From positions 1-64,000 of the IMG/VR virus record IMGVR_UViG_3300036770_008729: a stretch of DNA of 64,000 nt. One strand, written 5' to 3'. The notes beneath the pieces are model-generated. The model was not told the origin of the DNA. It saw nothing but the letters and a program-made list of their open reading frames with translations, and ran no database searches. Below, piece by piece: positions 3,927 to 61,655 of this stretch. A program made the position numbers and the translations under genes. Numbering within the stretch: the stretch's first letter is position 1; each line of letters begins with the position of its first letter.

Positions 3927-3935
3927 TATATATTA
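3927..3935 (-). promoter_or_regulatory. Putative phage late-promoter motif TAATATATA
   Basis: Same 9-mer as before several other structural or tagged genes; 21 nt upstream of ATG 3905. Confidence 0.45.
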
Positions 3936-3971
3936 TTTCTAAAAATCTTATTTTAATTCTAAAGTTAAAAA

Positions 3972-4334
3972 TTAGTATTTAGGAAGGTTCATGTCTGTAT
4001 TGATTTCAATTTTGAAATTGAAACCTGTATCTTCATCAGTGCCATATTTTATATCACTACTATATCCGTTAGACCCATCAAATGTTTTTGGTTTTGAACC
4101 ATGTAATAAAGATTTTTTTCTTTCAATCTCATTTTTTTTCTTTTGTTCTTCTAATTCTATCATTTGCTCAAATGTGAGTGAATTATCTGTTTGTTCAGGA
4201 ACAACTTGATTTGTGTTATATGAAGAAGTTTGATGTCCGTATTTTCTAAGGATCTGTTCGGCTTCCCAACCTGTTATTTCTTTTTCAGATTCAATTTTTT
4301 GTACTTCTATTTGTCTTACTTCTGGTCTGTTCAT
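3972..4334 (-). CDS. Hypothetical protein
   Basis: 120-aa ORF; TAAATATATA lies 4 nt upstream of the ATG. Confidence 0.7.
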   Translation of the reverse strand: MNRPEVRQIEVQKIESEKEITGWEAEQILRKYGHQTSSYNTNQVVPEQTDNSLTFEQMIELEEQKKKNEIERKKSLLHGSKPKTFDGSNGYSSDIKYGTDEDTGFNFKIEINTDMNLPKY

Positions 4335-4400
4335 AAATTATATATTTATTTTAAAAAAATAAAAAACCTTTTATTTTTTTTATATATAGTAATAATATAT

Positions 4401-4472
4401 TGCGGGATAGAGCAGAGGAAGCTCGCAAGGCTCATAACCTTGAGGTCGGAGGTTCGATTCCTTCTCCCGCTA
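4401..4472 (+). tRNA. trnM: tRNA-Met(CAT), initiator-like
   Basis: Acceptor TGCGGGA/TCCCGCT with 1:72 mismatch; D-stem GAGC/GCTC (A11:U24); anticodon arm CAAGG-CTCATAA-CCTTG; T-loop TTCGATT. Confidence 0.92.
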
Positions 4473-4478
4473 CAATTG

Positions 4479-4507
4479 AAAAACCTACTTTAGAGTAGGT
4501 TTTTTTT
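4479..4507 (+). terminator. Intrinsic terminator, probably bidirectional
   Basis: AAAACCTACT-TTAG-AGTAGGTTTT plus T-run, between the tRNA and a convergent ORF. Confidence 0.8.
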
Positions 4508-4513
4508 ATTAAA

Positions 4514-5068
4514 TCAAATAAATTCATATTGTCTAATCCAGATAGTAGCAATATATTTTGTTCCTGATATAACAGGGAGACCAGCATGAATACTATCATA
4601 GTCTAAAGTTCCATCATCATTTAAATTTGACCAAACAACAATTTTAGCTGTCTCTGGTTTGATTTTTTTTCCAATACTTGGAAAGTTAGTTTCACCACCT
4701 GAAAAGTTATCATTTAAATATAAGAGTACAGTATGTGTTCTTTGTCCACCTCTTTTCATTTGTTCTTCATAGTAAGATTCACCAGGGTGAAGAAAATCAT
4801 GATGATCTTTGTATTGACCTCCTACTTCATATTTGACTATATGTATATTTTCCATATTGATAATAGGAATGCCAACAAGTGAGGAAACCATTTTTATATA
4901 TTTTGATACATACTCATCTTCATCACTTTTCAACCAACATCCATCAGCTACTCTATATCCGTCTATATTTTTACCAAGAGTAGCAGCAGGTTTAAATTTA
5001 GAGTTAGCTAAAGAAATAAACTTTTCACACAATTCAACTTCACAAAAATTGGAATATTCTTCTATCAT
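4514..5068 (-). CDS. 2OG-Fe(II) oxygenase, prolyl 4-hydroxylase alpha-like
   Basis: YEVGGQYKDHHD (HxD), RTHTVLLYLND, GGETNFP, HAGLPV..GTKYIATIWIR. Confidence 0.88.
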   Translation of the reverse strand: MIEEYSNFCEVELCEKFISLANSKFKPAATLGKNIDGYRVADGCWLKSDEDEYVSKYIKMVSSLVGIPIINMENIHIVKYEVGGQYKDHHDFLHPGESYYEEQMKRGGQRTHTVLLYLNDNFSGGETNFPSIGKKIKPETAKIVVWSNLNDDGTLDYDSIHAGLPVISGTKYIATIWIRQYEFI

Positions 5069-5069
5069 A

Positions 5070-5453
5070 TTAAAAGCTAATTTTATAATTTACTCCAACT
5101 TCTTTGGTTTCTGGATTAAGATTTAAATTCAAACCCTTAATAAATTCTGGACTAATAACAATTGTTTTATCAGGTAAAAATTTTATGAAATCAGCTACAA
5201 ATTTTTTTGGTTCTAAAATATTATTTCCTAACATATTTACTAAAACTTGCTTGTTCTGAACTCCAGTTTTTTTGATTTGAATATTATATTTGTTACAAGT
5301 GTCTATTATATTCATTGCCGGTTTATTTTTAATTATTTCCTGAGCATCTAATTTAGAAATACCCAATCCTAAAAAAGTCGCTAAAGAAAAAGCAACATTT
5401 CTTAGTTGACTTTCATTCAATTTAAAATCATCAAAACCTAACAAATATTCCAT
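5070..5453 (-). CDS. Hypothetical protein with N-terminal tag-like sequence (MEYLLGFDDFKLNES)
   Basis: 127-aa ORF; TAATATATA at 5461-5469. Confidence 0.7.
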   Translation of the reverse strand: MEYLLGFDDFKLNESQLRNVAFSLATFLGLGISKLDAQEIIKNKPAMNIIDTCNKYNIQIKKTGVQNKQVLVNMLGNNILEPKKFVADFIKFLPDKTIVISPEFIKGLNLNLNPETKEVGVNYKISF

Positions 5454-5559
5454 ATTAGCATATATATTAATAATTTGTTAACAACTTCATCATAAACAAA
5501 AATCTTTTACATGAAACAATTTGTATATTTGTAATTAAAATAAAAAAAACAAAAACAAT

Positions 5560-6570: not shown

Positions 6571-7074
6571 TTAATTCTCTTTCCAATCATCTCTATTATT
6601 TAGAAATCTTAAATCATTGGTTGTTATATTGATATTTTTGAAGTGATTAAAAAAATCAACTAATTTTTCAACTGATTCATCTGTGAAAGAAAATATACAA
6701 TCCTTACAATCCTTACAAAATTTAGTTCCGTATGTCATATTCTGGATCACATGAATTTTATTAGGTGGTTCTAAGCTAAATTCCGATACAACAAAATCAC
6801 CTAAAGTTATATCAACATCAAATCTTATACTTTTAGTTGTTGCATCTTGAACAGTGTATAAATCAATTTCAAGAGTATCAGTATATCCCCACTCATTTTC
6901 AGTATTTACATAAGTGATTTGAAACATATCGCTATTTTTCATAATATTACCTCTTTTGAATTTGTGAATTCCATATTCTTGAATAGTAAACTCTTCTGGT
7001 AATATTCTACTCAAATCTATATCATATATCATATTTGATTGAGAATAAGACTCGAATTTTTTTAAATATTTCAT
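6571..7074 (-). CDS. Hypothetical protein with N-terminal tag (MKYLKKFES); paralog of 18695-19471
   Basis: Start moved from 7134 to ATG 7074, with TAATATATA at 7080-7088; shares DIT..F(S)(L/I)EPPNKI and DESV..LV.FFN.F with 18695-19471. Confidence 0.75.
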   Translation of the reverse strand: MKYLKKFESYSQSNMIYDIDLSRILPEEFTIQEYGIHKFKRGNIMKNSDMFQITYVNTENEWGYTDTLEIDLYTVQDATTKSIRFDVDITLGDFVVSEFSLEPPNKIHVIQNMTYGTKFCKDCKDCIFSFTDESVEKLVDFFNHFKNINITTNDLRFLNNRDDWKEN

Positions 7075-7152
7075 ATCTTTATATATTAATTTTCTCTTTA
7101 TTATATTTTTCGTTATTTCGATTGTGTTAAACAAAATTTGACAATTTTTATA

Positions 7153-7161
7153 TAATATATA
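7153..7161 (+). promoter_or_regulatory. Putative late-promoter motif TAATATATA upstream of the T9SS cargo gene
   Basis: Exact 9-mer 88 nt before ATG 7250, followed by a GC-rich structured segment. Confidence 0.4.
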
Positions 7162-14227: not shown

Positions 14228-14855
14228 ACTTTTTGTCAATTATAGCAAATGAGAAATGTTGTTTTGGTGGTAAAAAAACTATAGTTTTATCTAAAATACC
14301 TTCAAGTTTTTTTCTAATCTTATCCATGACAGATATGACATTGTCATACAAAGTTACATTCAGGTTTGTTTTTTGAACAAAAACAAAACAAGGAATCCAC
14401 CCTGAATTCAATAATTCTGGAATTTCTCTACTTTCTTCTTTTATTTTATCCTTAAAGTAACTAGAAATTGTAGGATTTTCAAACACACGAACCCAATCCA
14501 ATTTTTGATGTTTCATGCTCAATCCAACAAGAGCAGCATTAATAGATTTGAGGTACTTTAAGTCACCAATATTATTATTATTAAAATAGTCTTCAGTTCT
14601 TAAAAATTTTGTACTTAAAGTCTCACCGTTACATACTAAGTTTTGAAATCCAACTCCTGGTTTTAATAGGTAAGGACTTAAATAACCAATTGAAAATTCA
14701 GGAAATAAATCTTCTAAATCAACCAAACAATCAAAAGTATCTTCTATATTTAAATCATCAAAAGCACTTTCGATTATTTCAATACCGGATTCACAATCTT
14801 GAAGTTCAAGCTGTTCAATAAAATTATATCTTTCAAAAGTTTTGATGTATTTCAT
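14214..14855 (-). CDS. Hypothetical protein with N-terminal tag (MKYIKTFERY)
   Basis: 213-aa ORF starting 3 nt after the neck-like gene. Confidence 0.75.
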   Translation of the reverse strand: MKYIKTFERYNFIEQLELQDCESGIEIIESAFDDLNIEDTFDCLVDLEDLFPEFSIGYLSPYLLKPGVGFQNLVCNGETLSTKFLRTEDYFNNNNIGDLKYLKSINAALVGLSMKHQKLDWVRVFENPTISSYFKDKIKEESREIPELLNSGWIPCFVFVQKTNLNVTLYDNVISVMDKIRKKLEGILDKTIVFLPPKQHFSFAIIDKKFISQ

Positions 14856-17095: not shown

Positions 17096-17143
17096 GACTT
17101 ATATATTAAATTGATAATTCTATTTAAATTTCTTCTAAATTAT

Positions 17144-17174
17144 TTTGTTAATAAATAAATCCTCCTTATATTTG
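17144..17174 (+). promoter_or_regulatory. Bacteroidota primary-sigma promoter (-33 TTTG, -7 TAnnTTTG)
   Basis: TTTG 17144-17147, 19-nt spacer, TATATTTG 17167-17174, upstream of ATG 17205. Confidence 0.7.
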
Positions 17175-17204: not shown

Positions 17205-18479
17205 ATGAACATTAAAGAAAAATTCTTAGAATTAACAAGTAGAACATATCCTCACGGAACTGAGAAGGAAGTTTTTCCTCTACTTAATTCAGAATTAAAA
17301 GAAGATGAATTTGGTAATCTATTCATTAAAATTGGCGAGAGTGATGTTATGTTCACTGCTCACTTAGATACCGCAACTTCAGCTCTTACTAAAGTAGTTC
17401 ATGTTGAAGATGGTAATATAATTAAAACCGATGGTAAATCAATATTAGGAGCAGATGATAAAGCTGGTGTAACAATTATGTTACATATGATTGAAAAAAA
17501 TATACCAGGTCTTTACTACTTTTTCTTAGGTGAAGAAGTTGGTTGTGTTGGTTCAAGAAAAGTTGCAAATCAATATAAAGAACAAAAGATATCTGGAATT
17601 AATAAAGTAATATCTTTTGATAGAAGAGGTTATAATTCAGTAATCACTTTTCAATCTGGTTCAAGATGTTGTTCAGATAAGTTTGGTGAAGAATTAGCAA
17701 AACAATTAAATAATATTGAGTCTACTTTTAGTTACAAAAATGATCCTACTGGGTTACTTACTGACTCAATTCAGTTTGTGAGTTTATATCCAGAGTGTAC
17801 TAATATATCAGTTGGATATCAATATGAGCACACTTATACTGAGCAGCAGAACATTGAACACTTAGAGAAATTAGCTGAGGCTTGTTTGAAAGTTGATTGG
17901 AATAATTTACCAGTTGAGAGAGATCCTTCTAAAACAGAATACTCTTATAGTAGTTATTATGGATATGATTATGACTATGGATATAGCAATTACAAATCAT
18001 ATTCTGACTATGATTCAGTTTATTATAAAAAACAATCACCTAAGGTATTAACTGAAAAAATTTGGTTTATTGATGATAAATATGATTATGTTTCTTATGT
18101 AGAGGTTGATAAATCAAACAAAGTTGTAGCGGTTGATTTGGACTCTAGAAGAATTGAATATGAAAAAACAATTATCAATAATTTATTGAATCAACTTGAA
18201 TTAGAAAGAGAATCTATTACTTGGACAGGTTTCAAATTAGATGTTAAATATTCTGATAATCATTCTTCTCAGTGTGATAGAAATGATTTGATTGAATATC
18301 TACCAGAATTGGATTATAGCAAATTTGCTTCACTTACAGAAGAAGCTGTTAATGAATACTGTGCTAAAAACAATCAAAATTCTATTTCAGCTAATACCAA
18401 CTTTCTAACGGATAGAGATTATCCAGATTGGAATTATAATGAGTGGAATGACTATTTAGATAATGACTTATATGATTAA
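17205..18479 (+). CDS. M28/M20/M42-clan zinc peptidase with Tyr-rich C-terminal extension
   Basis: AHLDT, GADDKAG, GEEVG, FDRRG, NISVGY..EH metal-ligand motifs. Confidence 0.85.
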   Translation: MNIKEKFLELTSRTYPHGTEKEVFPLLNSELKEDEFGNLFIKIGESDVMFTAHLDTATSALTKVVHVEDGNIIKTDGKSILGADDKAGVTIMLHMIEKNIPGLYYFFLGEEVGCVGSRKVANQYKEQKISGINKVISFDRRGYNSVITFQSGSRCCSDKFGEELAKQLNNIESTFSYKNDPTGLLTDSIQFVSLYPECTNISVGYQYEHTYTEQQNIEHLEKLAEACLKVDWNNLPVERDPSKTEYSYSSYYGYDYDYGYSNYKSYSDYDSVYYKKQSPKVLTEKIWFIDDKYDYVSYVEVDKSNKVVAVDLDSRRIEYEKTIINNLLNQLELERESITWTGFKLDVKYSDNHSSQCDRNDLIEYLPELDYSKFASLTEEAVNEYCAKNNQNSISANTNFLTDRDYPDWNYNEWNDYLDNDLYD

Positions 18480-18639: not shown

Positions 18640-18694
18640 TATTACAGAATTGGGTATATACAATTTGTAAAATTTACAAATTAATATATACCCT

Positions 18695-19819: not shown

Positions 19820-19903
19820 TACTATTTCATATATAAATTATTCATTTAGTTTAATTTTATAATTCAAAAAAATTTATTATATTTGTCATTAATATATAAT
19901 ATA

Positions 19904-23432: not shown

Positions 23433-23448
23433 AAATGTATATATTAAT

Positions 23449-23479
23449 TTTGCACGTTAGAAAATTATTCTTATATTTA
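23449..23479 (+). promoter_or_regulatory. Near-consensus Bacteroidota promoter
   Basis: TTTG 23449-23452, 19-nt spacer, TATATTTA 23472-23479. Confidence 0.45.
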
Positions 23480-23965: not shown

Positions 23966-23997
23966 TTTGGTAAATTAAATACTTTTGATTATATTTG
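23966..23997 (+). promoter_or_regulatory. Bacteroidota primary-sigma promoter
   Basis: TTTG 23966-23969, 20-nt spacer, TATATTTG 23990-23997. Confidence 0.7.
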
Positions 23998-25237: not shown

Positions 25238-25271
25238 TCAATTATAGTTGTTTTTTTTAATATATACAACT

Positions 25272-26246: not shown

Positions 26247-26249
26247 CTG

Positions 26250-26378: not shown

Positions 26379-26430
26379 ATTGATAATAATTTTTTAATAT
26401 GTATATTTGTATATTAAATAAATAAAAATT

Positions 26431-50765: not shown

Positions 50766-52775
50766 TTAACCATTTCCTTGTGGTCCTGGTTTATTAACAA
50801 GTTGTCTAGTAATGACCGCTGTTTCTCTTGGTAACTGTGGATCTTTTATAATTCTTGGTACACTTCCAGCTGCTTGATTATTAAGTTCAGTAACATTTTG
50901 TCTATTATCAAATATTTTGAAAAGACCTGTATAAACCATTGTTGTTACGTTTTGACTGTAACTTGTTATATAAAATAAGTTTATTCCTGAATCGTATATT
51001 TTCTTAACTAAGTTAAATTTATTTTGAGGTATTTTAAATACTACTTGACCAACTTGTAGATTTATCTCATTTGTTTCTGTATAAAGTGGAAATTCTACAT
51101 TGTCTACAGAGTTTTTTATGACTAATTTTATTTCTCCCAAATTTGACATATCTAAATAGTTAGGAGCTTCCAATTCTCCTGTTGCAATAATAAATTTAAC
51201 TATATTATCAAATGGATATAGTATAATTTGCATTTTTGAAATACCGTAGAATATTTGTGCATTAAATACTGCATTATCAGATTTTCCTATTATATTATAC
51301 CTGTCTATAAGAACAGGAAATGGAACTTTAATAGACTGCACTAATCCATTACTTCCTGCTGAACCAACACCAGTGCCAATTCCTCCTAATGTTCCTCCAC
51401 CCAATGCTCCTCCACCGAATGTTCCATCCAATGTTCCACCTGTTATACCTCCACCTGAACCAGATGCTAAAACATCATTATTTGAAGCACCGTTTCCTGC
51501 TAATCCACCACCAACTAAGCCATTCATAAGACCTGGTGGTTGAGCCACAGATCCTAATCCTAATCTATTTAGTAGACCTTGTCCTTTGGTGGCTTGACCT
51601 TGTGCATTAGACATACCAAGCATCTTTGGATCTATAGCATTTTTTATAGCATAAATTTTTGGTTTAGATGCATTTTTTAAGTTAATCTTCATTAACTTCA
51701 AACTATATTTCGCAACTTCATCTTGTAACATACCATATGATGCTCTTCTTATTATATAAGATTCATCGGTTGCGTCTATTAATCTCAACTCAACATCAAT
51801 TATTGCAGTGGTTGTTGATGTCTTAATAATCGGTCTATATTCTATTGTCTCATTAAAGTTATCAGTAACCGTAATGGTTAGTGTTTTCCCTCTTATATTT
51901 TGCTCATAAAGTGTTATTGAGTATTGTGCATAGTATCTACTACCTTGATTAAAAGAATCTTCTATAAATTGATTAAATCCAGCTAATGTTTCATTATAGG
52001 TTCCATATATTTCAAAAAAGTCACCATTACTTGAGTTTTCTATTACTATACCTAATCTTTGGAATTCTGGAGTTTGTGAGAAACTTGTTGTTACTTTAGC
52101 CGCTAGTCTATAAGTTGTTATAGCGTTTATTGTTTGTATATTATCAATAAAATGAAAATCAAGAAATATTGGAGCGGTCATACTCAGACCAGTTCCATCT
52201 GTAAGATTTGCATTGATGCTATTTTCTTTTGGTAGTCTACCTGTTATTTGTGCAGATATTTCACTAACTGCCGGTATTTGAATCTCTATATTTTTCCCCC
52301 ATAATTTTTCTTGAAATAGAAGTGGTGGTGTACTAAAGTTCATCATATACTGCTGACTCAAGTCAGTCATATCAAAATAAAAATTTGAAATCTCGTATGT
52401 TTTAAAATTTAGAGTGTCGTAAGTATATAGTCTTACATAAAGACCTAAATACTCTCCAAAAGTCCAATTAATTGGAAAATGCATTCTTAGAGTATCATGT
52501 CTTATTGGTGTTCCTGATGAGAAATTTTTTATCTGAAGAAAACTGTAATTTGAAGTATCTATTTTTCCATATTTAGATGTAGCACTGTCGATTCTAAACA
52601 ATTGATTTCCGATATCATTATTGGTTATACTTGAGTCAGATGCAATGTAAGAAGACTTTTTATCCTTTGTATTTACAAGTATATTATACCCTTCACTTAT
52701 AAGATTATTATCATTATAGATATATTCGATAAGAACATTTTTATCTACCTTAACAAATTTAGAAATTTTAGACAT
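50766..52775 (-). CDS. Probable structural protein with internal Gly-rich low-complexity segment
   Basis: 669 aa; co-oriented with the tube-like gene; preceded by TTTATATATA. Confidence 0.55.
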   Translation of the reverse strand: MSKISKFVKVDKNVLIEYIYNDNNLISEGYNILVNTKDKKSSYIASDSSITNNDIGNQLFRIDSATSKYGKIDTSNYSFLQIKNFSSGTPIRHDTLRMHFPINWTFGEYLGLYVRLYTYDTLNFKTYEISNFYFDMTDLSQQYMMNFSTPPLLFQEKLWGKNIEIQIPAVSEISAQITGRLPKENSINANLTDGTGLSMTAPIFLDFHFIDNIQTINAITTYRLAAKVTTSFSQTPEFQRLGIVIENSSNGDFFEIYGTYNETLAGFNQFIEDSFNQGSRYYAQYSITLYEQNIRGKTLTITVTDNFNETIEYRPIIKTSTTTAIIDVELRLIDATDESYIIRRASYGMLQDEVAKYSLKLMKINLKNASKPKIYAIKNAIDPKMLGMSNAQGQATKGQGLLNRLGLGSVAQPPGLMNGLVGGGLAGNGASNNDVLASGSGGGITGGTLDGTFGGGALGGGTLGGIGTGVGSAGSNGLVQSIKVPFPVLIDRYNIIGKSDNAVFNAQIFYGISKMQIILYPFDNIVKFIIATGELEAPNYLDMSNLGEIKLVIKNSVDNVEFPLYTETNEINLQVGQVVFKIPQNKFNLVKKIYDSGINLFYITSYSQNVTTMVYTGLFKIFDNRQNVTELNNQAAGSVPRIIKDPQLPRETAVITRQLVNKPGPQGNG

Positions 52776-52811
52776 CTAATATTGATTTTGTTTTGATTAT
52801 ATATAAAAAAA

Positions 52812-55178: not shown

Positions 55179-55319
55179 TTTGCTTTTTATTTTTTTAATT
55201 TTCAAATCCATAAGATTTGATATTTGTTATATAGTTACTAATCAATAAAGTTTAATAAAATGTTAATTGTTTTTACTGAAAAAGTTACTAATAAATATAT
55301 ATCAAAAATTAAATTTGTT

Positions 55320-56282
55320 ATGGCTAAAAAATTTAAAATATTATCAATCGATGGTGGTGGTCTTAGAGGTATTGTTCCACTTCTTATTCTTAGAGAAATC
55401 GAAAATAAAACAGGTAAAAGAATTCACGAATTGTTTGACCTTATTACAGGAACATCTACTGGTGGCATTATTGCATGTGGTTTATCTTGCACAAAAGATG
55501 GCAAATCACCAGCAATTACTGTAGAAAAATTAATTGAACTCTACACTGCTGAAAGAGAAACAATTTTTCCATATAAAAGAAACTTCTTTCAAAAAATAGG
55601 CAGCGGTATTAATTCTTTATTTAATCCTAAGTTTTCACCAGATGGACTTGATCGTTTATTAACTGAATATTTTGATGATATGAGATTAAGTAATACATTA
55701 GTTCCAATTATTGTTACTTCTTATGATATCAAAAATAATGAAGTTGTAATGTTTAAAAGTAGAAGAAGTGGTGAGATTGGATATAACGCACTACTTAAAG
55801 ATGCTTGTAGATCAACATCTGCTGCTCCTACATACTTACCTTCCTATAAATTGGCTTTTGGTGGAAAACAAAGAGTTCTTATTGATGGTGGTGTTTATAT
55901 TAATAACCCTGCTCTTGGATCGGTATCTGATGCTTTAAGAAGCACTAAAGGATTAAAGATTTCCGATATAGAAGTTCTTTCACTTGGAACTGGAACTTAT
56001 CCAGCTGAGTTAGGGAAAAAAGATACTCCATCTTGGGGTTTAGTAAATTGGGCACAACCGATAACAAATATAATGATGCAAGCCACTTCTAATGCGACTG
56101 AGTATGAATGTAATGAGTTACTGAAAAAACATTTAAGAATACAATTAAAAATAGATGATCCTAAAATGACCGATATGTCAGATTCAAGACCTGGAACAGC
56201 TCAGTATATCATTGATAAAGTGGGTTCAGATATAATAAATAATAGTGAGATAATGAAAAAATTAGATGACTTTCTTAAATAA
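55320..56282 (+). CDS. Patatin-like phospholipase
   Basis: ILSIDGGGLRG, GTSTG nucleophile, STSAAPTYLP, IDGG; track start 55260; TAAATATATA at 55292-55301. Confidence 0.9.
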   Translation: MAKKFKILSIDGGGLRGIVPLLILREIENKTGKRIHELFDLITGTSTGGIIACGLSCTKDGKSPAITVEKLIELYTAERETIFPYKRNFFQKIGSGINSLFNPKFSPDGLDRLLTEYFDDMRLSNTLVPIIVTSYDIKNNEVVMFKSRRSGEIGYNALLKDACRSTSAAPTYLPSYKLAFGGKQRVLIDGGVYINNPALGSVSDALRSTKGLKISDIEVLSLGTGTYPAELGKKDTPSWGLVNWAQPITNIMMQATSNATEYECNELLKKHLRIQLKIDDPKMTDMSDSRPGTAQYIIDKVGSDIINNSEIMKKLDDFLK

Positions 56283-57033
56283 GATAGCTTGTAATTTCTT
56301 TAGTTATATCATTATTAGAATTGATTAAGTTTTTGTAAGTTTTATCATCTACCTTTACAAAGATTGGATTAAATCCAATATAAGTAATCACTTCATTGCC
56401 AAATGGCAGTTCTCCTTCAATGTAATCTTCTAACCAAAATTCTTTATATGGTCTCCAACCAGTAGCTTTATAGATTCTTATTAAAGAATCTATAACTATT
56501 TGTTTATTTTCTATAGAGAAGTTTCCACAATTAATGTTGATATAAGGAACCGCTGGTATTTTCCCATTTTCTATATTATCGACAAAAAGTTGCAATGTTG
56601 GTTTATGTGGCAATTTATTTAATTTACTTAAGTAAATAGCTTCCTCAACCTCGTTAAAATCAACTTCTTCTTCTATAATTTTTTTTGAATTTAATTCGTC
56701 GGGTCTTAGAAATATACTACCATATGTTTCATCATATATCAATTCACATTTTTTATTTTGCCAATCATCTGGATTAACTGACATTTCGTATGATATAGCA
56801 CTTCTAATCTCTCTTTTATATGTGTGTAGAATTTCATATTTTGGATATATAAAGTATCCTGAAGAAATAAAATTTGCCTTACTTATTATATTATCATCTG
56901 ATAAATCAAAAAGTAACTCTTGAAAATCTCTAAAATCAGGAAACTGACTTTTAGTTATGGCAAAATCGGCTAAATGTCTAGTATCAGAATTATTAATTTG
57001 TTCAAATAGTTTATATGGCCTAATATGCTTCAT
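56275..57033 (-). CDS. Hypothetical protein with N-terminal tag (MKHIRPYKLFE)
   Basis: 252 aa; last gene of the tagged array. Confidence 0.75.
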   Translation of the reverse strand: MKHIRPYKLFEQINNSDTRHLADFAITKSQFPDFRDFQELLFDLSDDNIISKANFISSGYFIYPKYEILHTYKREIRSAISYEMSVNPDDWQNKKCELIYDETYGSIFLRPDELNSKKIIEEEVDFNEVEEAIYLSKLNKLPHKPTLQLFVDNIENGKIPAVPYININCGNFSIENKQIVIDSLIRIYKATGWRPYKEFWLEDYIEGELPFGNEVITYIGFNPIFVKVDDKTYKNLINSNNDITKEITSYLI

Positions 57034-57914
57034 TAATAGTTGAGTAATATTTTTATTGTATAATCATAAATATCTGTATTTGTGAATTGTCTAGTTCCCC
57101 TAGCGTGGTCAAAAATAACATCACTATAATCTAAAGTAGTGAGTATAGATGGTAAAACTTTATCAAATTGACTTTCTAATTCTATTAAGTTCATCTTTCC
57201 TTTCATATAATTATCACCTTGACCAATTTCTATTACTATACAAGGTACATTCATTTCAATAATCTTATCTATTGAGTAACTTCTCTTCTTATCAATATCT
57301 GAATTATGAATAACTGAATATTTACCATTTGATGTTTCAAAAGAATCACCTGATTTAAATCCATAGTTATCAATATTAAAGTTAGCACATTGCCATTTTG
57401 GTTCTGTGACATAATAACTTTCATCACTTTGCCTCATTAAAACTGAAGGATATGAACCAATGTAAAATGTTGGAAAAGCAATATCTTTTATAATATGAAT
57501 CATAGCTCTGAAATAATCTTTCTCATCTCTATTTCTAACTGTTAGAATTCCATTATATTTATATTGAATTTCTTTGTTATAATTATCTGAATCTCCATAA
57601 GCGATACAAGTTGATACCCATTTAGATTTTTCATGTGGTAAATTATCAAATACATCCATAAGTAATCTATCTTCTACATAATAAACATCTACTTTATTTA
57701 GAGCCGTGAATATTCTATCTACATGATTTTTTATCTTATTATAGTAACCATCCCCAATAAAATGATTTGTCCATTTTTCTAAATCTTTAATTGGTTTTCT
57801 ACCCCACTCAAAATCTTTAAGATCTTCAATCCAATCATGAATTCCGTATTTAGAATCTAATCCAATATTCATATTTTCATTTATAAAGTGATTATATTTC
57901 TTAATTATTTTCAT
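57033..57914 (-). CDS. Hypothetical protein with N-terminal tag (MKIIKKYNHFINE)
   Basis: 293 aa, overlaps its neighbours. Confidence 0.75.
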   Translation of the reverse strand: MKIIKKYNHFINENMNIGLDSKYGIHDWIEDLKDFEWGRKPIKDLEKWTNHFIGDGYYNKIKNHVDRIFTALNKVDVYYVEDRLLMDVFDNLPHEKSKWVSTCIAYGDSDNYNKEIQYKYNGILTVRNRDEKDYFRAMIHIIKDIAFPTFYIGSYPSVLMRQSDESYYVTEPKWQCANFNIDNYGFKSGDSFETSNGKYSVIHNSDIDKKRSYSIDKIIEMNVPCIVIEIGQGDNYMKGKMNLIELESQFDKVLPSILTTLDYSDVIFDHARGTRQFTNTDIYDYTIKILLNY

Positions 57915-58191
57915 AGATTTTATTTATTAAAATTGCTAAATTAATATCTTTTTCTGTAACAATATCACCAGAATCATGCGTTGAAAGAGTTACAATAACT
58001 TTGTCAAACATCCATTCAATTTTTGGATGATGATTTTGTGATTCTGATTCTGTTGCCACTTGATTAATAAATTGTCTCGCTGATTCAAATGAATCAAAAG
58101 TAAACTCACTGGTTAATTTTTTACCATCATTTTTCCAACTTTTTAAATCTTCAGTTGATTCATATATTCTATAAGATTTTAGGTGCTTCAC
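57901..58191 (-). CDS. Pterin-4-alpha-carbinolamine dehydratase-like protein with N-terminal tag (MKHLKSYRIYE)
   Basis: W......L...F.F.SF..A..F...V....E..NHHP.I......V...LSTHD.G..VT.KD..LA. Confidence 0.85.
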   Translation of the reverse strand: MKHLKSYRIYESTEDLKSWKNDGKKLTSEFTFDSFESARQFINQVATESESQNHHPKIEWMFDKVIVTLSTHDSGDIVTEKDINLAILINKIYENN

Positions 58192-58631
58192 TTTCTAAAA
58201 ATTATTTTAATGGATTGGTTTTCTGCCATCCATTGACCAACTTCTAAATCTTCAAGTTCTATTTTCTCTACATTATCTTCTGATGGATCTGAACTGTATT
58301 CATCTTGTAAAAGTATTGTATATTTCCAATCTTTCATAAACTCAATAGACCTTCTAATACAATCCATTAATTCTGTAGATATTTGAACTTCTCTATAATC
58401 TGATACGTATTCTTCATCATCATCAAATCCAGGATCGAAATCTCTATGATATGGTTCTTCATCTCCAAATGAAATATAAACTGTGTAGTAATTAGATATA
58501 TCATCACCATCTGCCCAAGCAATCCACTCTTCATCAGGATGACTATGTTTAACATCTAAAAAGATGTCTTCTAAATCAGCTTTGATTCTATCAAAGTTCT
58601 CGAATAACTTATATGTTTTTAAATGTTTCAT
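58188..58631 (-). CDS. Acidic hypothetical protein with N-terminal tag (MKHLKTYKLFE)
   Basis: 147 aa, 4-nt overlaps with neighbours. Confidence 0.75.
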   Translation of the reverse strand: MKHLKTYKLFENFDRIKADLEDIFLDVKHSHPDEEWIAWADGDDISNYYTVYISFGDEEPYHRDFDPGFDDDEEYVSDYREVQISTELMDCIRRSIEFMKDWKYTILLQDEYSSDPSEDNVEKIELEDLEVGQWMAENQSIKIIFRK

Positions 58632-58879
58632 TTCTCTTCTCTTCTCTTCTTCATTAAATCTTTAATAAATTCTTTTATCTCATCATTGCAATCTGGAGTA
58701 GGTAAGAAGCCATATCCTCTCATTCTTGATGACCATTTGATCTGACCAATAACCTGACCATCTTTACTAACATTATAAGTATCGGTTTTAGCACCTTTCT
58801 TTTTAGTTTGTAAAGTGAACTTTAATTTAGAAACTTCTTTTTTAGTTTCAAATAATTTATATGTCTTTAAATGTATCAT
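58628..58879 (-). CDS. Basic hypothetical protein with N-terminal tag (MIHLKTYKLFE)
   Basis: 83 aa. Confidence 0.72.
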   Translation of the reverse strand: MIHLKTYKLFETKKEVSKLKFTLQTKKKGAKTDTYNVSKDGQVIGQIKWSSRMRGYGFLPTPDCNDEIKEFIKDLMKKRREEK

Positions 58880-58902
58880 TTGAAAAGTTTTAGATGTTTC
58901 AT
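58876..58902 (-). other. 8-codon minigene consisting only of the tag (MKHLKLFK*)
   Basis: ATG AAA CAT CTA AAA CTT TTC AAA TGA; 4 nt downstream of TAATATATA (58907-58915); its TGA overlaps the next ATG. Confidence 0.55.
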
Positions 58903-58926
58903 AAAGTATATATTAAATACACAAAA

Positions 58927-59460
58927 TTAAATACTTAATTCAACCTTTTCTCCAGATGGGGGTGAGAAAGAAACACTTTTCAAGTTATTAAACTTATATT
59001 TATCGTCTAAATTTATATAATTTTTACCAGTACCTTTATTTACATAGCAAATTGTTATGTGTGGTTTGTAATCGGGATAAGATTCTTCATTCGGTAGTGT
59101 TTTTAACATATCATGTAGCTTCTGTAAATCAGGAGTTTTCTTAACATTAAACTTAACTACATCATAATCTTTATTCTCGAATAAATCTATACCTTCAATT
59201 TCTATGTTTAGTGGTTTTGCAAATGAGGTCAAAATCTCTTGAACTTGTTCTGATGTTACTTCTGGTTTTAATCCATATAATAAAGTCAAATGTGGAAAAT
59301 CTTCTATACCCTGATTTTCCTCTGGATTATAAATATCTTCTTTTTTTATTTTAGAAGTTATTTCATCCCAATTTGTGAAAGGAATCTTTAACATCGCACA
59401 ACCAAATTCGTGCTGACCTGATGATTCTTTAATAAACTGTATATAACTTTTTATCCTCAT
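58927..59460 (-). CDS. 2H phosphoesterase (Acb1/gp57B or LigT-like) with N-terminal tag (MRIKSYIQFIKES)
   Basis: Two HxT motifs, PHLTLLYG and YKPHITICY; ATG 59460 gives an ATGA overlap (track start 59487). Confidence 0.8.
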   Translation of the reverse strand: MRIKSYIQFIKESSGQHEFGCAMLKIPFTNWDEITSKIKKEDIYNPEENQGIEDFPHLTLLYGLKPEVTSEQVQEILTSFAKPLNIEIEGIDLFENKDYDVVKFNVKKTPDLQKLHDMLKTLPNEESYPDYKPHITICYVNKGTGKNYINLDDKYKFNNLKSVSFSPPSGEKVELSI

Positions 59461-59996
59461 ACTGCTCCTTGTATTATTATTCTCCACTCACCACCTTTAT
59501 TATTATAAGAAAATTTAAAATAAACTCCTATTTCAGATTGTATTCTTTTTACTGCTACTAAAAAGTCATCAAATTCCTGTGTAATCTTTTTTCTTCTTTT
59601 ATCTTGTTCGGCCATTTCTAACTCAGCCTCTTTTTTAGTCATTACATCTATCGATGGATTATCTTCAAATTCCATTTCTTGAGAGTCCCAAGTTATTTCA
59701 CCATCTGATGATATTCTACCAGTCATATCTACAAATTCTGTTCTTGCTCCTGATGTGATATAAACATCTTCCTTTGGCATCATTCTACAATTAAAATTAG
59801 GAAATCCCCAAATAGAAATTGACATATCATCACCAGACCAATCGGTTCTATTTTCAATCCAACTCCATCCATTATCTTCAAATTCTATGAAACATTCTTT
59901 AATTGTATCCAATACCTGCTGATACACTTTACGCATGTGAATTGCATATGGATGAGTTTCTTCAGTATTTTCATTAAATCTTTTTAAATGTTTCAT
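59457..59996 (-). CDS. Hypothetical protein with N-terminal tag (MKHLKRFNEN)
   Basis: 179 aa. Confidence 0.75.
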   Translation of the reverse strand: MKHLKRFNENTEETHPYAIHMRKVYQQVLDTIKECFIEFEDNGWSWIENRTDWSGDDMSISIWGFPNFNCRMMPKEDVYITSGARTEFVDMTGRISSDGEITWDSQEMEFEDNPSIDVMTKKEAELEMAEQDKRRKKITQEFDDFLVAVKRIQSEIGVYFKFSYNNKGGEWRIIIQGAV

Positions 59997-60012
59997 TTCA
60001 TATATTTATTAA

Positions 60013-60933
60013 TTATTCTAATCCTAATTCTTGGAGTATTTCATGCAATTTATCTATTTTTATCATTATTGCTTCATCCTCAAACCATGATTCTAAACCT
60101 TCACCTTCATATTCAAAATCATCATCTAAATCAGCATATAATTTCATTGTTGAGATTACATCACCTAATTTAAATTTATTGAATACAGGGTCTAGTATCT
60201 TATTAAGATTTCCTAAAAGTGAAAGACTATTATCCCACAATCTTCCAAAGTATTTTGTTTTGATAGCATCACTAACTTTACAGGTATCTAGATAAGTTTT
60301 TAATTTATTCCAATCAGGATTTACATAAGTTTTAGTCCAGTTTGGAGTTAGCTGGTTTCCAAGTTTATCAAATCTATCTATACGAGTTTCTATATGAGCG
60401 TAATCTCTTAAAACTCCTAAGTCACTTAATAAAGAAGATGTATATCGAAAGAGAGAAGGTCTTCTCATATCTTCTTCTCTAAATGCGGCTTTATTTGGTA
60501 TTTTACCAAAACAATTCCAGAAATCACCTCTATCACCAGTGGCGACTTTTGTTGTATCAAAAGGAATGACTACATAATCGACAGATTTACCTTTTACAAA
60601 TCCTGCACCATGTGTGAAAGCTCTTCTTGAAGAAGCGCAACATAAACCTTTATTTCTTCTCGGCCAACCTTTCCACGAGTCTAAGTTGGAAGTAAGTGTA
60701 TTATGAACATCGTTTGATGAGTATGGGTCTATTCTAAGAGATGTTGATGACTTTGGATCTACTAAAACAAAATCACCTCTATTTTCATCTTTTCTTAAAA
60801 TAAGAACATCATCAGTATAATCATCACCCCAAGATAAAAACTTTTTGCAATTTTGTTGCAATATTTTTACTACTTCTTCTTTAGTGAGAATAGTTGATTT
60901 TAAAGTTTCATTAAATCTTCTTAAATGTTTCAT
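60013..60933 (-). CDS. Hypothetical protein with N-terminal tag (MKHLRRFNET)
   Basis: 306 aa. Confidence 0.75.
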   Translation of the reverse strand: MKHLRRFNETLKSTILTKEEVVKILQQNCKKFLSWGDDYTDDVLILRKDENRGDFVLVDPKSSTSLRIDPYSSNDVHNTLTSNLDSWKGWPRRNKGLCCASSRRAFTHGAGFVKGKSVDYVVIPFDTTKVATGDRGDFWNCFGKIPNKAAFREEDMRRPSLFRYTSSLLSDLGVLRDYAHIETRIDRFDKLGNQLTPNWTKTYVNPDWNKLKTYLDTCKVSDAIKTKYFGRLWDNSLSLLGNLNKILDPVFNKFKLGDVISTMKLYADLDDDFEYEGEGLESWFEDEAIMIKIDKLHEILQELGLE

Positions 60934-61631
60934 TTTAGGTATTTATCAAAAACTTCTTCAATTTTTGGTTCTAATTTTGTATAATCTATATCAAATGTTT
61001 TGGGCATAATAGATACTATCTCATCTATGTTATATGGCTCTTTTCCAATAGTATACCAACTTCTATTCTTTTTCATCCATAGATAAAAAAGAATATAAGC
61101 ATTTGATTTTTGAATATATTCTTCAGTGTCAATTATTTTATCTAATGACCATTTCTTAATTTTTTCAACAGTTCTTTTTTCACAATCAACTTCTATATCA
61201 ATAGATGTTCTTATTTCCTCGGCAATTACATTTAGATCAACATCCTCTTTTCCAGCCAACCATTCATCAGTTTGAACTAATCCTATATTATTAGTCCAAG
61301 TAGGATCGTTTTCTAAAAACTGATCCATGTGAGATGATTCGTGTAATAATATAAGAAGCCAATAAGATATATCTTTTCCCATAGCACAAGCTAGAAGTCT
61401 ATTATCTCCATCAAAATAACCATTACAAAATATATTTGGTCCTCCTAAAGAAACACCTTTTTCAGGTGATAGAAAAAGCTTAATGTTATTTTCTTTGGCA
61501 AAGTTTTTTAAGTGGTCAATAAATAATTTAACTTTTTCAATCTCTTCTTTTGTTAATTTACCAAAGTTAAACTCACCACCGTGTGGATTATCTATTTCCT
61601 GAAAGTCTTCAAATAATTTTAAGTATCTCAT
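60930..61631 (-). CDS. Putative HExxH metallopeptidase-like protein with N-terminal tag (MRYLKLFEDF)
   Basis: LLILLHESSHMDQ, downstream EVDCE; TAATATATA at 61638-61646. Confidence 0.65.
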   Translation of the reverse strand: MRYLKLFEDFQEIDNPHGGEFNFGKLTKEEIEKVKLFIDHLKNFAKENNIKLFLSPEKGVSLGGPNIFCNGYFDGDNRLLACAMGKDISYWLLILLHESSHMDQFLENDPTWTNNIGLVQTDEWLAGKEDVDLNVIAEEIRTSIDIEVDCEKRTVEKIKKWSLDKIIDTEEYIQKSNAYILFYLWMKKNRSWYTIGKEPYNIDEIVSIMPKTFDIDYTKLEPKIEEVFDKYLK

Positions 61632-61655
61632 AAAAGCTATATATTAAAATAAAAA

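What the first reader, a model, noticed from the sequence alone, without database searches (positions are those of the whole stretch)
3927..61646. Conserved TAATATATA 4-7 nt upstream of start codons: putative late promoter giving near-leaderless mRNAs
Seen at 5461, 7080, 17100, 23438, 58907 and 61638 (minus strand) and 18682, 19890 and 25258 (plus strand), with spacers of 4-7 nt to the ATG. It also occurs at 3927 (21 nt) and 7153 (88 nt), with variants at 4339, 52798 and 55292. No Shine-Dalgarno sequence is evident. Known: T4 late promoters are a single -10 element (TATAAATA) read by the phage sigma gp55. Inference: this is an analogous late element, and transcription would start almost at the ATG. 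Caveat: an all-AT 9-mer occurs by chance in this DNA, so the evidence is the fixed spacing, not the count.
Basis: partly seen in the sequence, partly recalled or inferred. Interest (0 to 1): 0.6.

Follow-up and report, generated by a model that had tools for sequence, protein, structure and literature searches.

The report
Phage promoter giving leaderless mRNAs
A short all-AT sequence (TAATATATA) sits just before about a quarter of the genes of an uncultured 281-kb phage of Bacteroidota and its many relatives; it is almost certainly a phage-specific promoter placed so that many messages begin at, or within a base of, the start codon.

Summary
In the whole 281-kb phage genome there are 87 copies: 83 are intergenic and 74 point at an ORF within 40 nt. 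Spacing is bimodal, 4-7 nt (39 sites, mode 4) or about 15-28 nt. Shuffling gives 0.5 sites at 4-7 nt against 35 observed.

The element (tttTAATATATA-N4-A) is conserved before orthologous genes in 23 of 25 related jumbo-phage contigs. It marks heads of transcription units, 43% against 6% of internal genes, and it also precedes tRNA clusters.

The host is Bacteroidota: a T9SS sorting domain, no Shine-Dalgarno, and host-type TTTG/TAnnTTTG promoters. Those host-type promoters form a second class, conserved on different, non-structural genes.

In long-leader sites the 5th base after the motif is A in 87%. That is exactly where the A of ATG lies in the 4-nt class, so this base is the predicted start and those mRNAs are leaderless.

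No gp55, gp45 clamp or phage RNA polymerase was found. The genome does encode one ECF-type sigma factor, the best candidate reader.

The nearest precedent is the phiEco32 gp36 promoter tAATGTAtA. No RNA data exist, so the start sites and the timing are inferred.

The parts
17100..17108 (-). P1 promoter element (TAATATATA), 4 nt before the ATG of the 745-aa neck-like virion gene 14858-17095
   Evidence: Conserved as TTTAATATATA 4-7 nt (21 nt in one sub-clade) before the ortholog in 23 of 25 relatives. The protein falls in the 'Gp88 family' / T4-neck-like clusters.
18682..18690 (+). P1, 4 nt before gene 18695-19471 (258 aa, N-terminal MKYLRTF tag)
   Evidence: 6 of 7 orthologs keep P1 at 4-7 nt.
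19890..19898 (+). P1, 5 nt before gene 19904-20359. A host-type -7 element (19878-19885) sits 4 nt upstream, giving a tandem promoter.
   Evidence: 11 of 13 orthologs keep P1, and 5 also keep the -7 element.
23438..23446 (-). P1, 5 nt before the 632-aa gene 21534-23432. It overlaps the divergent host-type -7 element 23445-23452 (+) of gene 23484.
   Evidence: 3 of 4 orthologs keep P1.
25258..25266 (+). P1, 5 nt before gene 25272-26123, which is followed by tRNA-Met 26173-26247
   Evidence: 2 of 2 orthologs have P1 at 4 nt.
5461..5469 (-). P1, 7 nt before gene 5070-5453
7080..7088 (-). P1, 5 nt before gene 6571-7074 (N-tag MKYLKKFESY)
   Evidence: 4 of 6 orthologs keep P1.
61638..61646 (-). P1, 6 nt before gene 60930-61631 (N-tag MRYLKLFEDF). 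A hairpin plus T-run terminator lies just upstream.
58907..58915 (-). P1, 4 nt before an 8-codon ORF (MKHLKLFK, then a stop) that overlaps by ATGA the start of the 83-aa gene 58628-58879, whose ATG lies 27 nt from the motif
3927..3935 (-). P1 of the long-leader class, 21 nt before the 1039-aa tail-spike-like virion gene 786-3905
   Evidence: PHROG virion structural / tail spike families, E 1e-33 to 1e-27.
7153..7161 (+). P1 copy with A (not T) before it, 88-91 nt before the 2324-aa Ig-domain gene 7250/7253-14227. This is the weakest assignment.
   Evidence: The leader fold is no better than shuffles (z 0.48).
4339..4347 (-). P1 variant AAATATATA, 4 nt before gene 3972-4334
52798..52806 (-). 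P1 variant TTATATATA, 22 nt before the 669-aa gene 50766-52775
55293..55301 (+). P1 variant AAATATATA, 18 nt before ATG 55320, probably the true start of the gene called from 55260
57921..57929 (-). P1 variant TAATAAATA, 6 nt before gene 57033-57914 (N-tag)
60003..60011 (-). P1 variant TAATAAATA, 6 nt before gene 59457-59996 (N-tag)
17167..17174 (+). Host-type (Bacteroidota) -7 element TATATTTG with TTTG upstream, 30 nt before the M28 peptidase gene 17205-18479. It belongs to the contrasting promoter class.
   Evidence: 18 of 19 orthologs keep a -7 element and 0 of 19 have P1.
23990..23997 (+). Host-type -7 element with -33 TTTG, 19 nt before gene 24017-24373
   Evidence: 8 of 9 orthologs are host-type and 0 have P1.
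26402..26409 (+). Host-type -7 element, 21 nt before MgtC gene 26431-26895. It heads the 24-kb plus-strand operon running to about 50146.

Best explanation
TAATATATA (full consensus tttTAATATATA-N4-A, here called P1) is the single recognition element of a phage-specific promoter class. It occurs in a 281-kb uncultured jumbo phage of a Bacteroidota host and in a large clade of related freshwater jumbo and mega-phages.

P1 occupies the position of the host's '-7' element, roughly -13 to -5. Transcription is predicted to begin at the 5th base after the 9-mer, a conserved A.
- In the commonest arrangement (4 nt spacer) that A is the A of the ATG, so the mRNA is truly leaderless.
- Spacers of 5-7 nt give leaders of 0-3 nt.
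- The second class (about 15-28 nt) gives short A-rich leaders without a Shine-Dalgarno sequence, as is normal in Bacteroidota.

Host-type TTTG/TAnnTTTG promoters drive a separate, non-structural and presumably early set of genes. P1 drives about half the genome, including the recognisable virion genes, so it is a middle/late class.

The most likely reader is host core RNA polymerase carrying the phage's own ECF-type sigma factor (203 aa, genome 149159-149770, outside the window).

Shown here: the enrichment, spacing, orientation, conservation, the class partition, the +5 A and the presence of the sigma gene.
For: 1) Chance is excluded. 35 sites lie 4-7 nt before starts against 0.51 in shuffles. 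The share is 45% against 3.3% for composition-matched 9-mers. 83 of 87 copies are intergenic although only 11% of the genome is.

2) It marks unit heads. 94 of 220 head genes carry P1 or a tolerated variant, against 9 of 160 operon-internal genes (Fisher p 2e-17). Three copies point at tRNA clusters with no protein gene to translate.

3) Phylogenetic footprint. The 745-aa gene keeps TTTAATATATA in 23 of 25 relatives (46-67% aa identity) while the flanks differ. Pooled relatives have 141 copies, 70 of them at 4-7 nt. A further 80 IMG/VR loci hold 214 more copies, 75 at 4-7 nt and 73 at 14-30 nt.

4) The promoter class is conserved gene by gene. P1 genes keep P1 (6/7, 11/13, 3/4, 4/6). Host-type genes keep TAHHTTTG and never P1 (18/19, 7/8, 8/9).

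5) Start-site signature. In 54 long-leader sites the 5th base after the motif is A in 87%, against about 50% at +2 to +4 (p 5e-7).

6) Host geometry. In F. johnsoniae the -7 element lies 4-5 nt from the start (PMC6847099). The phage's own host-type -7 elements peak at 4-5 nt before ATG: 15 in this genome and 19 in relatives (p 2e-8 and 8e-6).

7) The ATG after P1 is a real start. The conserved N-terminal peptide MKYLKxFExF begins there in 18 genes that have 4-6 nt spacers.

8) The host is Bacteroidota: a T9SS Por_Secre_tail domain, no Shine-Dalgarno, and enriched TTTG-N-TAnnTTTG (11 against 1.4 expected).

9) Sigma factor. Sigma70_r4_2 at 1.4e-12, a weak region 2 match, phrog_1740 at 4.8e-18. 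The model matches ECF sigmas. Homologs occur in 7 of 7 near-complete relatives. The sigma genes are not preceded by P1.

10) Function split. P1 precedes tail-spike-like, neck-like, head-tail adaptor, baseplate-operon, virion-protein and tail-fiber genes. Host-type promoters precede M28 peptidase, MgtC, metallophosphatase, UvdE and cREC genes.

11) Precedent. The phiEco32 gp36 holoenzyme reads a single element, tAATGTAtA, before middle and late genes (PMC8948821).
Against: - There are no RNA data. No public run on record as RNA holds the phage, and two metatranscriptomes laid on a 5.9-kb stretch gave nothing.
- ECF sigmas normally need a conserved -35 element, and this sigma has a good region 4. 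Yet no -35-like element is seen upstream of P1.
- The sigma homologs are only 20-33% identical across phages that share an invariant motif.
- In E. coli systems (phiEco32, T4) the start lies 6-8 nt after the element, which here would fall inside or after the ATG.
- P1 also precedes genes that are early or middle in T4, such as topoisomerase II, HNH endonucleases and a methylase. Major capsid, portal, terminase and sheath genes were not identified. 'Late' is therefore not established.
- The promoter of the sigma gene's own unit was not identified.
Confidence: 0.72

Rival explanations
1. P1 is a promoter, but it is read by an unrecognised phage-encoded (possibly virion-borne) RNA polymerase, as in phiKZ/AR9, N4 or crAss-like phages. 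The start would lie within or just after the motif, which is still near-leaderless.
For: It is a single short element with no -35, like single-subunit or nvRNAP promoters (AR9 AACA-N6-TA/G, phiKZ TATG; PMC5312081). Several very large proteins have no family match: 1914 aa, 695 aa, 669 aa and 632 aa.
Against: No match was found to the RNAP beta' or beta domains or to T7-type RNAP (the T7 control rang nowhere, so that test is weak). No DxDGD motif occurs in any called protein. The genome does encode a sigma factor, which implies use of host core polymerase. Jumbo phages of the group that includes the Bacteroidetes phages Lak and PTm1 lack RNAPs and carry sigma factors (PMC7824862).
Confidence: 0.12
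2. P1 is an mRNA element, not a promoter. It would be an AT-rich translation enhancer or ribosome landing site that replaces the Shine-Dalgarno sequence, with transcription starting further upstream.
For: The 4-7 nt distance resembles that of a ribosome-binding site. Bacteroidota lack Shine-Dalgarno sequences and use A-rich upstream signals (PMC6847099). No RNA data exclude it.
Against: A second spacing mode at 15-28 nt holds about 40% of sites. Only 6% of operon-internal genes carry it, against 43% of unit heads. Copies precede tRNA clusters. A conserved A sits at +5 irrespective of where the ATG is. Divergent gene pairs with 16-28 nt between their ATGs carry two overlapping opposed copies, leaving no room for an upstream promoter outside coding sequence. 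A proven promoter element, that of phiEco32, is 8/9 identical.
Confidence: 0.07
3. P1 is read by the host's primary sigma (sigma-A of Bacteroidota), re-targeted by a small phage factor in the manner of T4 AsiA/MotA, or by a host alternative sigma. The phage ECF-type sigma would serve some other, smaller regulon.
For: P1 is in register with the host -7 element. It shares TA at the 5' end, the 8-9 bp length and the 4-5 nt distance to the inferred start. The phage sigma has a region 4 with no matching -35 element at P1, and its sequence is poorly conserved across phages.
Against: T-8, T-7, T-6 and G-5 are nearly invariant in host promoters, whereas P1 has ATAT or ATA at those positions. No AsiA- or MotA-like protein was sought or seen. 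The two classes stay strictly separate across orthologs.
Confidence: 0.07
4. The fixed spacing is a by-product of duplication of one gene family (the MKYLK-tag genes) together with its upstream DNA, not an independent signal.
For: 29 of the 46 tag genes have P1 directly upstream. An 8-codon tag remnant follows the 58907 site.
Against: 74 genes outside the family also carry P1 with the same bimodal spacing. The tag proteins share no similarity beyond residue 16 (best E 0.003). DNA upstream of P1 is not conserved. Unrelated orthologous genes keep P1 across phages.
Confidence: 0.02

Closest known systems
phiEco32 gp36-dependent middle/late promoters (tAATGTAtA)
   Same: A single, highly conserved 9-bp AT-rich element with no -35 element. 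It is 8 of 9 bases identical to P1. It lies before middle and late genes and is read by host core polymerase carrying a phage-encoded sigma-family protein, while early genes use host-type promoters (PMC8948821; PMC12276001).
   Different: The start is 6-8 bp after the element there and is predicted at the 5th base here. gp36 lacks region 4, whereas the sigma here has a clear region 4. There is no significant sequence relationship (hhalign E 0.005, probability 7%). The hosts differ: E. coli podovirus against Bacteroidota jumbo phage. There are 6 promoters there and about 100 here. Those transcripts are not described as leaderless.
T4 late promoters (TATAAATA) read by gp55 with gp33 and the gp45 clamp
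   Same: A single AT-only -10-type element with no -35, placed before virion genes. A phage factor confers specificity on host core polymerase.
   Different: The sequence differs. No gp55 (phrog_234, phrog_12791) or gp45 (phrog_223) match was found in the genome, and there is no hhalign similarity between the phage sigma and gp55. T4 late mRNAs have leaders with Shine-Dalgarno sequences.
Bacteroidota primary-sigma promoters (-33 TTTG / -7 TAnnTTTG)
   Same: The position and length of the element match, and it lies 4-5 nt from the start (PMC6847099). A weak or absent upstream element and T/A-rich flanks are shared. The phage carries bona fide copies of this class.
   Different: P1 lacks the nearly invariant TTTG. 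The two classes sit on different genes and stay separate in evolution.
Leaderless mRNAs (lambda cI from PRM; mycobacteria and their phages; Deinococcus; archaea)
   Same: A promoter element at a fixed short distance from an ATG, so the transcript starts at the start codon. There is no ribosome-binding site.
   Different: Here it would be the main mode of a phage-specific regulon in a phylum where 87% of host transcripts have leaders longer than 10 nt. It is not yet shown by RNA data.
AR9 / phiKZ jumbo-phage early and late promoter classes
   Same: Two promoter classes partition a jumbo-phage genome, and some genes carry tandem promoters of both classes, for example gene 19904.
   Different: Those phages use their own multisubunit RNA polymerases and have leaders of 26-491 nt. 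No such polymerase was found here.

Membership tests
T4-type late transcription system | Single -10-type AT-rich element without a -35 element | tested here: met
   No positional signal lies upstream of P1 beyond a T-run. The element sequence differs from TATAAATA.
T4-type late transcription system | gp55-family sigma encoded by the phage | tested here: not met
   phrog_234 and phrog_12791 gave no candidate at E up to 10 in a six-frame search. hhalign of the phage sigma against T4 gp55 gave probability 0.8%.
T4-type late transcription system | gp45-type sliding clamp acting as activator | tested here: not met
   phrog_223 found no match. phmmer with T4 gp44, gp45, gp62 and others found nothing.
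T4-type late transcription system | gp33 co-activator | not tested
Phage-sigma-dependent single-element promoters (phiEco32 gp36 type) | Phage-encoded sigma-family protein present | tested here: met
   203-aa protein at genome 149159-149770: Sigma70_r4_2 at 1.4e-12, phrog_1740 at 4.8e-18, and an ECF-sigma fold.
Phage-sigma-dependent single-element promoters (phiEco32 gp36 type) | Homology of the sigma to gp36, which lacks region 4 | tested here: not met
   hhalign E 0.005, probability 7%. Region 4 is present here.
Phage-sigma-dependent single-element promoters (phiEco32 gp36 type) | Holoenzyme with the phage sigma initiates at the element | not testable with these tools
   This needs in vitro transcription or 5'-end mapping.
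ECF (group 4) sigma regulon | Bipartite promoter with conserved -35 and -10 elements | tested here: not met
   No -35-like element at P1.
Bacteroidota primary-sigma promoters | -7 element TAnnTTTG with near-invariant TTTG | tested here: not met
   P1 has ATAT/ATA where TTTG is required. A separate set of true TAHHTTTG promoters exists in the phage.
Leaderless mRNA | Primary 5' end at, or within a few nt of, the start codon | not testable with these tools
   No RNA run holds the phage. Indirect support comes from the 4-nt mode, the conserved A at +5 and the host -7 geometry.
Leaderless mRNA | The ATG next to the promoter is the real start codon | tested here: met
   The conserved N-terminal peptide starts at that ATG in 18 genes with 4-6 nt spacers. 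Ortholog alignments start there.
Jumbo-phage own-RNAP promoters (phiKZ/AR9, crAss-like, N4/T7) | Phage-encoded RNA polymerase | tested here: not met
   PF00623, PF00562 and PF00940 gave no match. No DxDGD motif occurs in any called protein. Divergent enzymes could escape these tests.

The most novel reading that the evidence does not exclude
The P1 regulon would be a clade-wide expression programme of Bacteroidota jumbo and mega-phages. An ECF-type phage sigma would work without a -35 element and start transcription on the A of the ATG. Within it, 46 otherwise unrelated proteins (12% of the proteome, 44 of them in P1 units) carry the same 10-11-residue N-terminal peptide, M-K-[YH]-[LI]-K-x-[FY]-x-x-F-E. 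This peptide could be a sorting or handling tag. By analogy it might target proteins to the capsid or for injection, like the 10-residue capsid-targeting sequence of T4 internal proteins, or it might mark clients of the phage's own Hsp70.
Probability: 0.25. Interest if true: 0.8.

Novelty: new variant of a known kind. Interest (0 to 1): 0.6.

Why it matters
- It gives a usable regulatory map for a large clade of uncultured freshwater jumbo and mega-phages (150-600 kb contigs). It provides two promoter classes, predicted start sites and unit boundaries, and it corrects several gene starts.
- It predicts that a Bacteroidota phage expresses a large share of its genes as leaderless mRNAs, in a phylum that already lacks Shine-Dalgarno initiation. 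That makes this a natural system for studying how such ribosomes choose start codons.
- It nominates one small sigma factor and one 9-bp element as an orthogonal expression switch for Bacteroidota, a phylum with few genetic tools.
- The near-identity to the phiEco32 gp36 element raises the question of whether unrelated phage sigmas converge on the same easily melted sequence.

Tried and rejected
- RNA evidence: no listed holder of the phage is an RNA run. Two metatranscriptomes from a study that holds a strain variant gave no contigs on a 5.9-kb stretch with four P1 sites. Only DNA strain variants were seen.
- Upstream -35-like element: neither a position-weight logo nor positional 4-mers found one.
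- Terminators just upstream of P1: 3 of 87 sites against 7 of 111 controls, so no enrichment.
- gp55, gp45, RNAP beta' and beta, T7 RNAP and the DxDGD motif: nothing found. The first Sigma70_r2 six-frame search missed the sigma that the region 4 models later found.
- phmmer with 11 T4 proteins against the proteome: nothing.
- Major capsid (Gp23) and sheath Pfam models: nothing. The head genes therefore remain unidentified and 'late' could not be anchored on them.
- A profile of the 745-aa family against PDB sequences: nothing.
- Rfam on the window: only the two tRNAs. The 88-nt leader after 7153 folds no better than shuffles.
- Lak Prevotella megaphage locus: no P1 pattern. The 642-kb LR756502 phage shows it weakly: 4 of 14 copies at 4-5 nt.
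- Literature: no paper holds TAATATATA as a phage promoter, and none holds the tag peptide.
- The large protein searches were not used.

Full report
**What the window is.** The window is the first 64 kb of a single 281,114-bp IMG/VR virus record. CheckV rates it 94% complete. It has 30% G+C and is read in code 11. My own simple gene caller found 381 genes covering 89% of the sequence. There are 27 tRNA genes.

Its nearest relatives in the phage collection are the 634-735-kb 'uncultured phage' genomes LR756502 and its kin. Prevotella Lak megaphages are more distant. IMG/VR holds at least 25 related contigs of 15-508 kb whose 745-aa protein is 46-67% identical. Near-identical DNA occurs in subsurface, freshwater, lagoon and marine metagenomes from ten studies.

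**The host is Bacteroidota.** Three lines agree.
- A 1497-aa protein ends in a Por_Secre_tail (type IX secretion) sorting domain.
- G is depleted, not enriched, at -12 to -6 before starts. Upstream regions are A-rich and ATGAAA opens 120 of 380 genes, as described for Flavobacterium johnsoniae (PMC6847099).
- The phylum-specific promoter TTTG-N(17-23)-TAnnTTTG is enriched upstream of genes: 11 against 1.4 expected. The -7 element alone gives 50 against 17.

**The observation.** All 11 exact copies are at the stated places.

Genome-wide there are 87 copies. 74 are followed within 40 nt by an ATG that opens an ORF of at least 60 codons. The spacing is bimodal:
- 4 nt (21 sites), 5 nt (9), 6 nt (5) and 7 nt (4);
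- then almost nothing until a broad second mode at 15-28 nt, about 32 sites.

For the 125 other 9-mers made of five A and four T, only 3.3% of copies lie 4-7 nt before such an ATG, against 45% for the motif. Shuffling the 40 nt upstream of every gene gives 0.51 copies at 4-7 nt against 35 observed. In the window alone it is 0.12 against 8. 83 of the 87 copies are intergenic.

The consensus extends to three T's on the 5' side. Single changes are tolerated only at positions 1 (A), 2 (T) and 6 (A). Positions 3-5 and 7-9 are strict. With these variants, 103 of 381 genes carry the element directly upstream.

- The ATG after 58907 opens only eight codons, and the real gene starts 27 nt from the motif.
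- The variant at 55293 lies 18 nt before ATG 55320, probably the true start of the gene called from 55260.

**Why it is a promoter and not a translation signal.**
- It marks heads of transcription units: 94 of 220 heads against 9 of 160 operon-internal genes (p 2e-17).
- Three copies inside the tRNA array point at tRNA clusters 160-190 nt downstream.
- Divergent gene pairs whose ATGs are only 16-28 nt apart carry two overlapping, opposed copies (genome 163475/163478, 141545/141559, 272363/272370).
- The second spacing mode is hard to reconcile with a ribosome-binding role.
- The element is conserved where everything around it has changed. Before the ortholog of the 745-aa gene, 23 of 25 related contigs have TTTAATATATA at 4-7 nt, or at 21 nt in one sub-clade, with unrelated flanks and different first codons.
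- Pooled, the relatives hold 141 copies, 45 of them at exactly 4 nt and 19 at 5 nt.
In the 80 listed loci that I examined (685 kb) there were 214 further copies with the same two modes.

**Two promoter classes that stay apart.** Host-type -7 elements (here usually TATATTTG followed by TA) precede a different set of genes, and the assignment is conserved gene by gene.

| Gene (window start) | Orthologs with host-type -7 | Orthologs with P1 |
|---|---|---|
| M28 peptidase, 17205 | 18 of 19 | 0 |
| 23484 | 7 of 8 | 0 |
| 24017 | 8 of 9 | 0 |
| 18695 | 0 of 7 | 6 of 7 |
| 19904 | 5 of 13 | 11 of 13 |
| 21534 | 0 of 4 | 3 of 4 |
| 6571 | 0 of 6 | 4 of 6 |

Gene 19904 has both elements in tandem, and five of its orthologs keep both.

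Genes behind host-type promoters that could be named are non-structural: M28 peptidase, MgtC, a metallophosphatase, UvdE and a cREC receiver domain.

Genes behind P1 that could be named include:
- a tail-spike-like protein;
- a neck-like 'Gp88 family' protein;
- a head-tail adaptor, a phrog_1645 virion protein and a tail fiber;
- the operon that holds the gp6-like baseplate wedge.

P1 also precedes a topoisomerase II subunit and an HNH endonuclease, and a gene whose N-terminus looks like a Dam methylase.

Following each gene back to its first recognisable promoter puts 208 of 381 genes in P1 units and 85 in purely host-type units. Host-type promoters can work at time zero, while P1 needs something the phage brings or makes. 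P1 is therefore best called a phage-specific middle/late class. 'Late' in the strict sense is not shown, because capsid, portal, terminase and sheath genes were not recognised.

**Where transcription should start.**
- In F. johnsoniae the -7 element spans -12 to -5 and lies 4 or 5 nt from the start site.
- The phage's own host-type -7 elements show a sharp peak at 4-5 nt before ATG: 15 of 52 in this genome and 19 of 122 in relatives (p 2e-8 and 8e-6). Four of them have a -33 TTTG as well. Leaderless design is therefore used in these phages independently of P1.
- In the 54 P1 sites with long leaders, where no start codon constrains the sequence, the 5th base after the 9-mer is A in 87%. The next two are A in 76% and 80%, against about 50% A at positions +2 to +4 (p 5e-7). 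That is exactly where the A of ATG lies in the 4-nt class.
- In the 5-nt class the 5th base is T and the 6th is the A of ATG, which matches the '4 or 5 nt' latitude.

I therefore predict initiation on that A. The transcript would be 5'-AUG in the 4-nt and 5-nt classes, with 1-3 nt leaders at 6-7 nt spacers and about 10-24 nt A-rich leaders in the second mode.

The adjacent ATG is a genuine start. In 18 genes with 4-6 nt spacers a conserved N-terminal peptide begins at it.

With E. coli-type geometry the start lies 6-8 nt after the element, as in phiEco32. The ATG would then be lost from the transcript, so the model depends on the closer Bacteroidota geometry. This step is inferred, not shown.

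**What reads it.** Six-frame searches found no gp55 (two PHROG families), no gp45 clamp, no RNAP beta' or beta domains and no T7-type polymerase. No protein carries a DxDGD motif.

The genome does encode one sigma-family protein, at 149159-149770 on the plus strand (203 aa).
- Sigma70_r4_2 matches at 1.4e-12, Sigma70_r4 at 1.3e-6 and region 2 weakly at 0.003. phrog_1740 'RNA polymerase sigma factor' matches at 4.8e-18 over residues 25-201.
- An AlphaFold model (pLDDT 76.6) shows two helical domains joined by a 30-residue disordered linker. It best matches ECF sigmas: M. tuberculosis SigL and SigH, E. coli sigma-E, AlgU and SigW.
- It is the only sigma in the genome.
- Homologs occur in 10 of 14 related records and in all 7 that are at least 90% complete, at 20-33% identity.
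- None of these sigma genes has P1 in front, as expected if the sigma is made before P1 is used.

Its neighbours are an exonuclease, a 2H phosphoesterase and a Dam methylase. Jumbo phages of the group that includes the Bacteroidetes phages Lak and PTm1 are reported to lack RNA polymerases and to carry sigma factors (PMC7824862).

The assignment of P1 to this sigma is plausible but unproven. A sigma with a good region 4 would be expected to use a -35 element, and none is seen.

**Closest precedent.** In phiEco32, host core polymerase with the phage sigma gp36 reads middle and late promoters that consist of a single highly conserved element, tAATGTAtA (PMC8948821). This differs from P1 at one base. 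The two sigmas are not detectably related and the hosts belong to different phyla, so this looks like convergence on an easily melted sequence rather than common descent.

T4 late promoters are the classical analogue of the architecture, but their defining proteins are absent here.

**Verdict.** It is wrong or unproven in detail: the system is not gp55-type, not strictly late, has two spacing classes, and needs Bacteroidota rather than E. coli geometry.

It is a new variant of a known kind. No paper in the library describes this element or this clade's transcription.

Noticed in passing
Window genes 6571-7074(-), 14214-14855(-), 56275-57033(-), 57033-57914(-), 58188-58631(-), 60013-60933(-), 60930-61631(-); 39 more across the genome (e.g. 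L003:9714-10640, L005:10500-14029, L009:15361-16995): 46 of 381 proteins (53-544 aa) begin with the same peptide, M-K-[YH]-[LI]-K-x-[FY]-[ENK]-x-F-E, yet show no pairwise similarity beyond residue 16 (best E 0.003). Some carry unrelated domains (AAA_33, L5 gp82). The pattern matches 1 of 1324 internal Met positions. 44 of the 46 lie in P1 units. The tag also occurs in relatives, in LR756502, and in 42 of 81 IMG/VR seed hits. It may be a sorting or chaperone tag, by analogy with the T4 capsid-targeting sequence. No paper mentions it.
   Followed up: partly
Genome 125007, 207164, 232593, 238923, 274073, 276824 (MPKR[IL]xL...) and 200646, 226699, 259587 (MIRSTLGI...); all outside the window: Two further small sets of P1-driven proteins share N-terminal peptides. 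They may be tail-fiber-like proteins with a common attachment end.
   Followed up: no
window:58876-58906 (-): An 8-codon ORF (MKHLKLFK, then a stop) starts 4 nt after P1 and overlaps by ATGA the start of an 83-aa gene that itself begins MIHLKTYKLFE. It looks like a remnant of recombination between tag-coding 5' ends.
   Followed up: partly
Genome 79549, 93233, 114719, 115210, 121038, 125614, 165519, 179749, 209299, 221685, 228576, 240577, 252198, 265492, 270946: Host-type -7 elements (TAHHTTTG) sit exactly 4-5 nt before an ATG, so a subset of host-polymerase transcripts should also be leaderless. Orthologs of window gene 23484 show this in 6 of 8 relatives.
   Followed up: partly
window:26402-50146 (+): A 24-kb single-strand operon has strong positive GC skew, one host-type promoter and no P1. 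It holds MgtC, a Lon-like ATP-dependent protease (phrog_4871, 5.5e-251) and about 20 genes of 200-370 aa. Two of these open with Rossmann-type G-x-x-G-x-x-G N-termini, suggesting sugar-nucleotide enzymes. This cluster may be why IMG/VR flags the record as a 'provirus'.
   Followed up: partly
L001:6270-10763 (-) (genome 66270-70763): A 1497-aa phage protein has PKD-like, Ig and proprotein-convertase P domains and a C-terminal type IX secretion sorting domain. A phage-encoded substrate of the host T9SS would be unusual.
   Followed up: no
L002:4408-6273 (+) and genome 75819-76895 (-): The phage encodes a full-length DnaK/Hsp70, 58-64% identical to those of the 634-735-kb phages. A neighbour opens with the DnaJ-type 'DYYxxLGV' N-terminus; the DnaJ call rests on that motif only.
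   Followed up: partly
Genome 260795-264410: An array of 21 tRNA genes on both strands has three P1 copies that share an upstream 'agagaaaaactt' block and point at the clusters.
   Followed up: partly
Genome 163475-163486, 141545-141567, 272363-272378: Back-to-back, partly overlapping P1 copies sit in 16-28-nt gaps between divergent ATGs. Both promoters cannot be occupied at the same time.
   Followed up: no
window:4401-4473 and 26173-26247 (+): There are two tRNA-Met (CAT) genes. The second lies just after a P1-driven gene.
   Followed up: no
L042-L053 (relatives): Relatives carry a well-conserved sigma type (consensus FSEQEKLF...STIKSQIRNGR). Two of them carry a second, divergent copy that is closer to the one in this genome. 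This genome has only the divergent type.
   Followed up: partly
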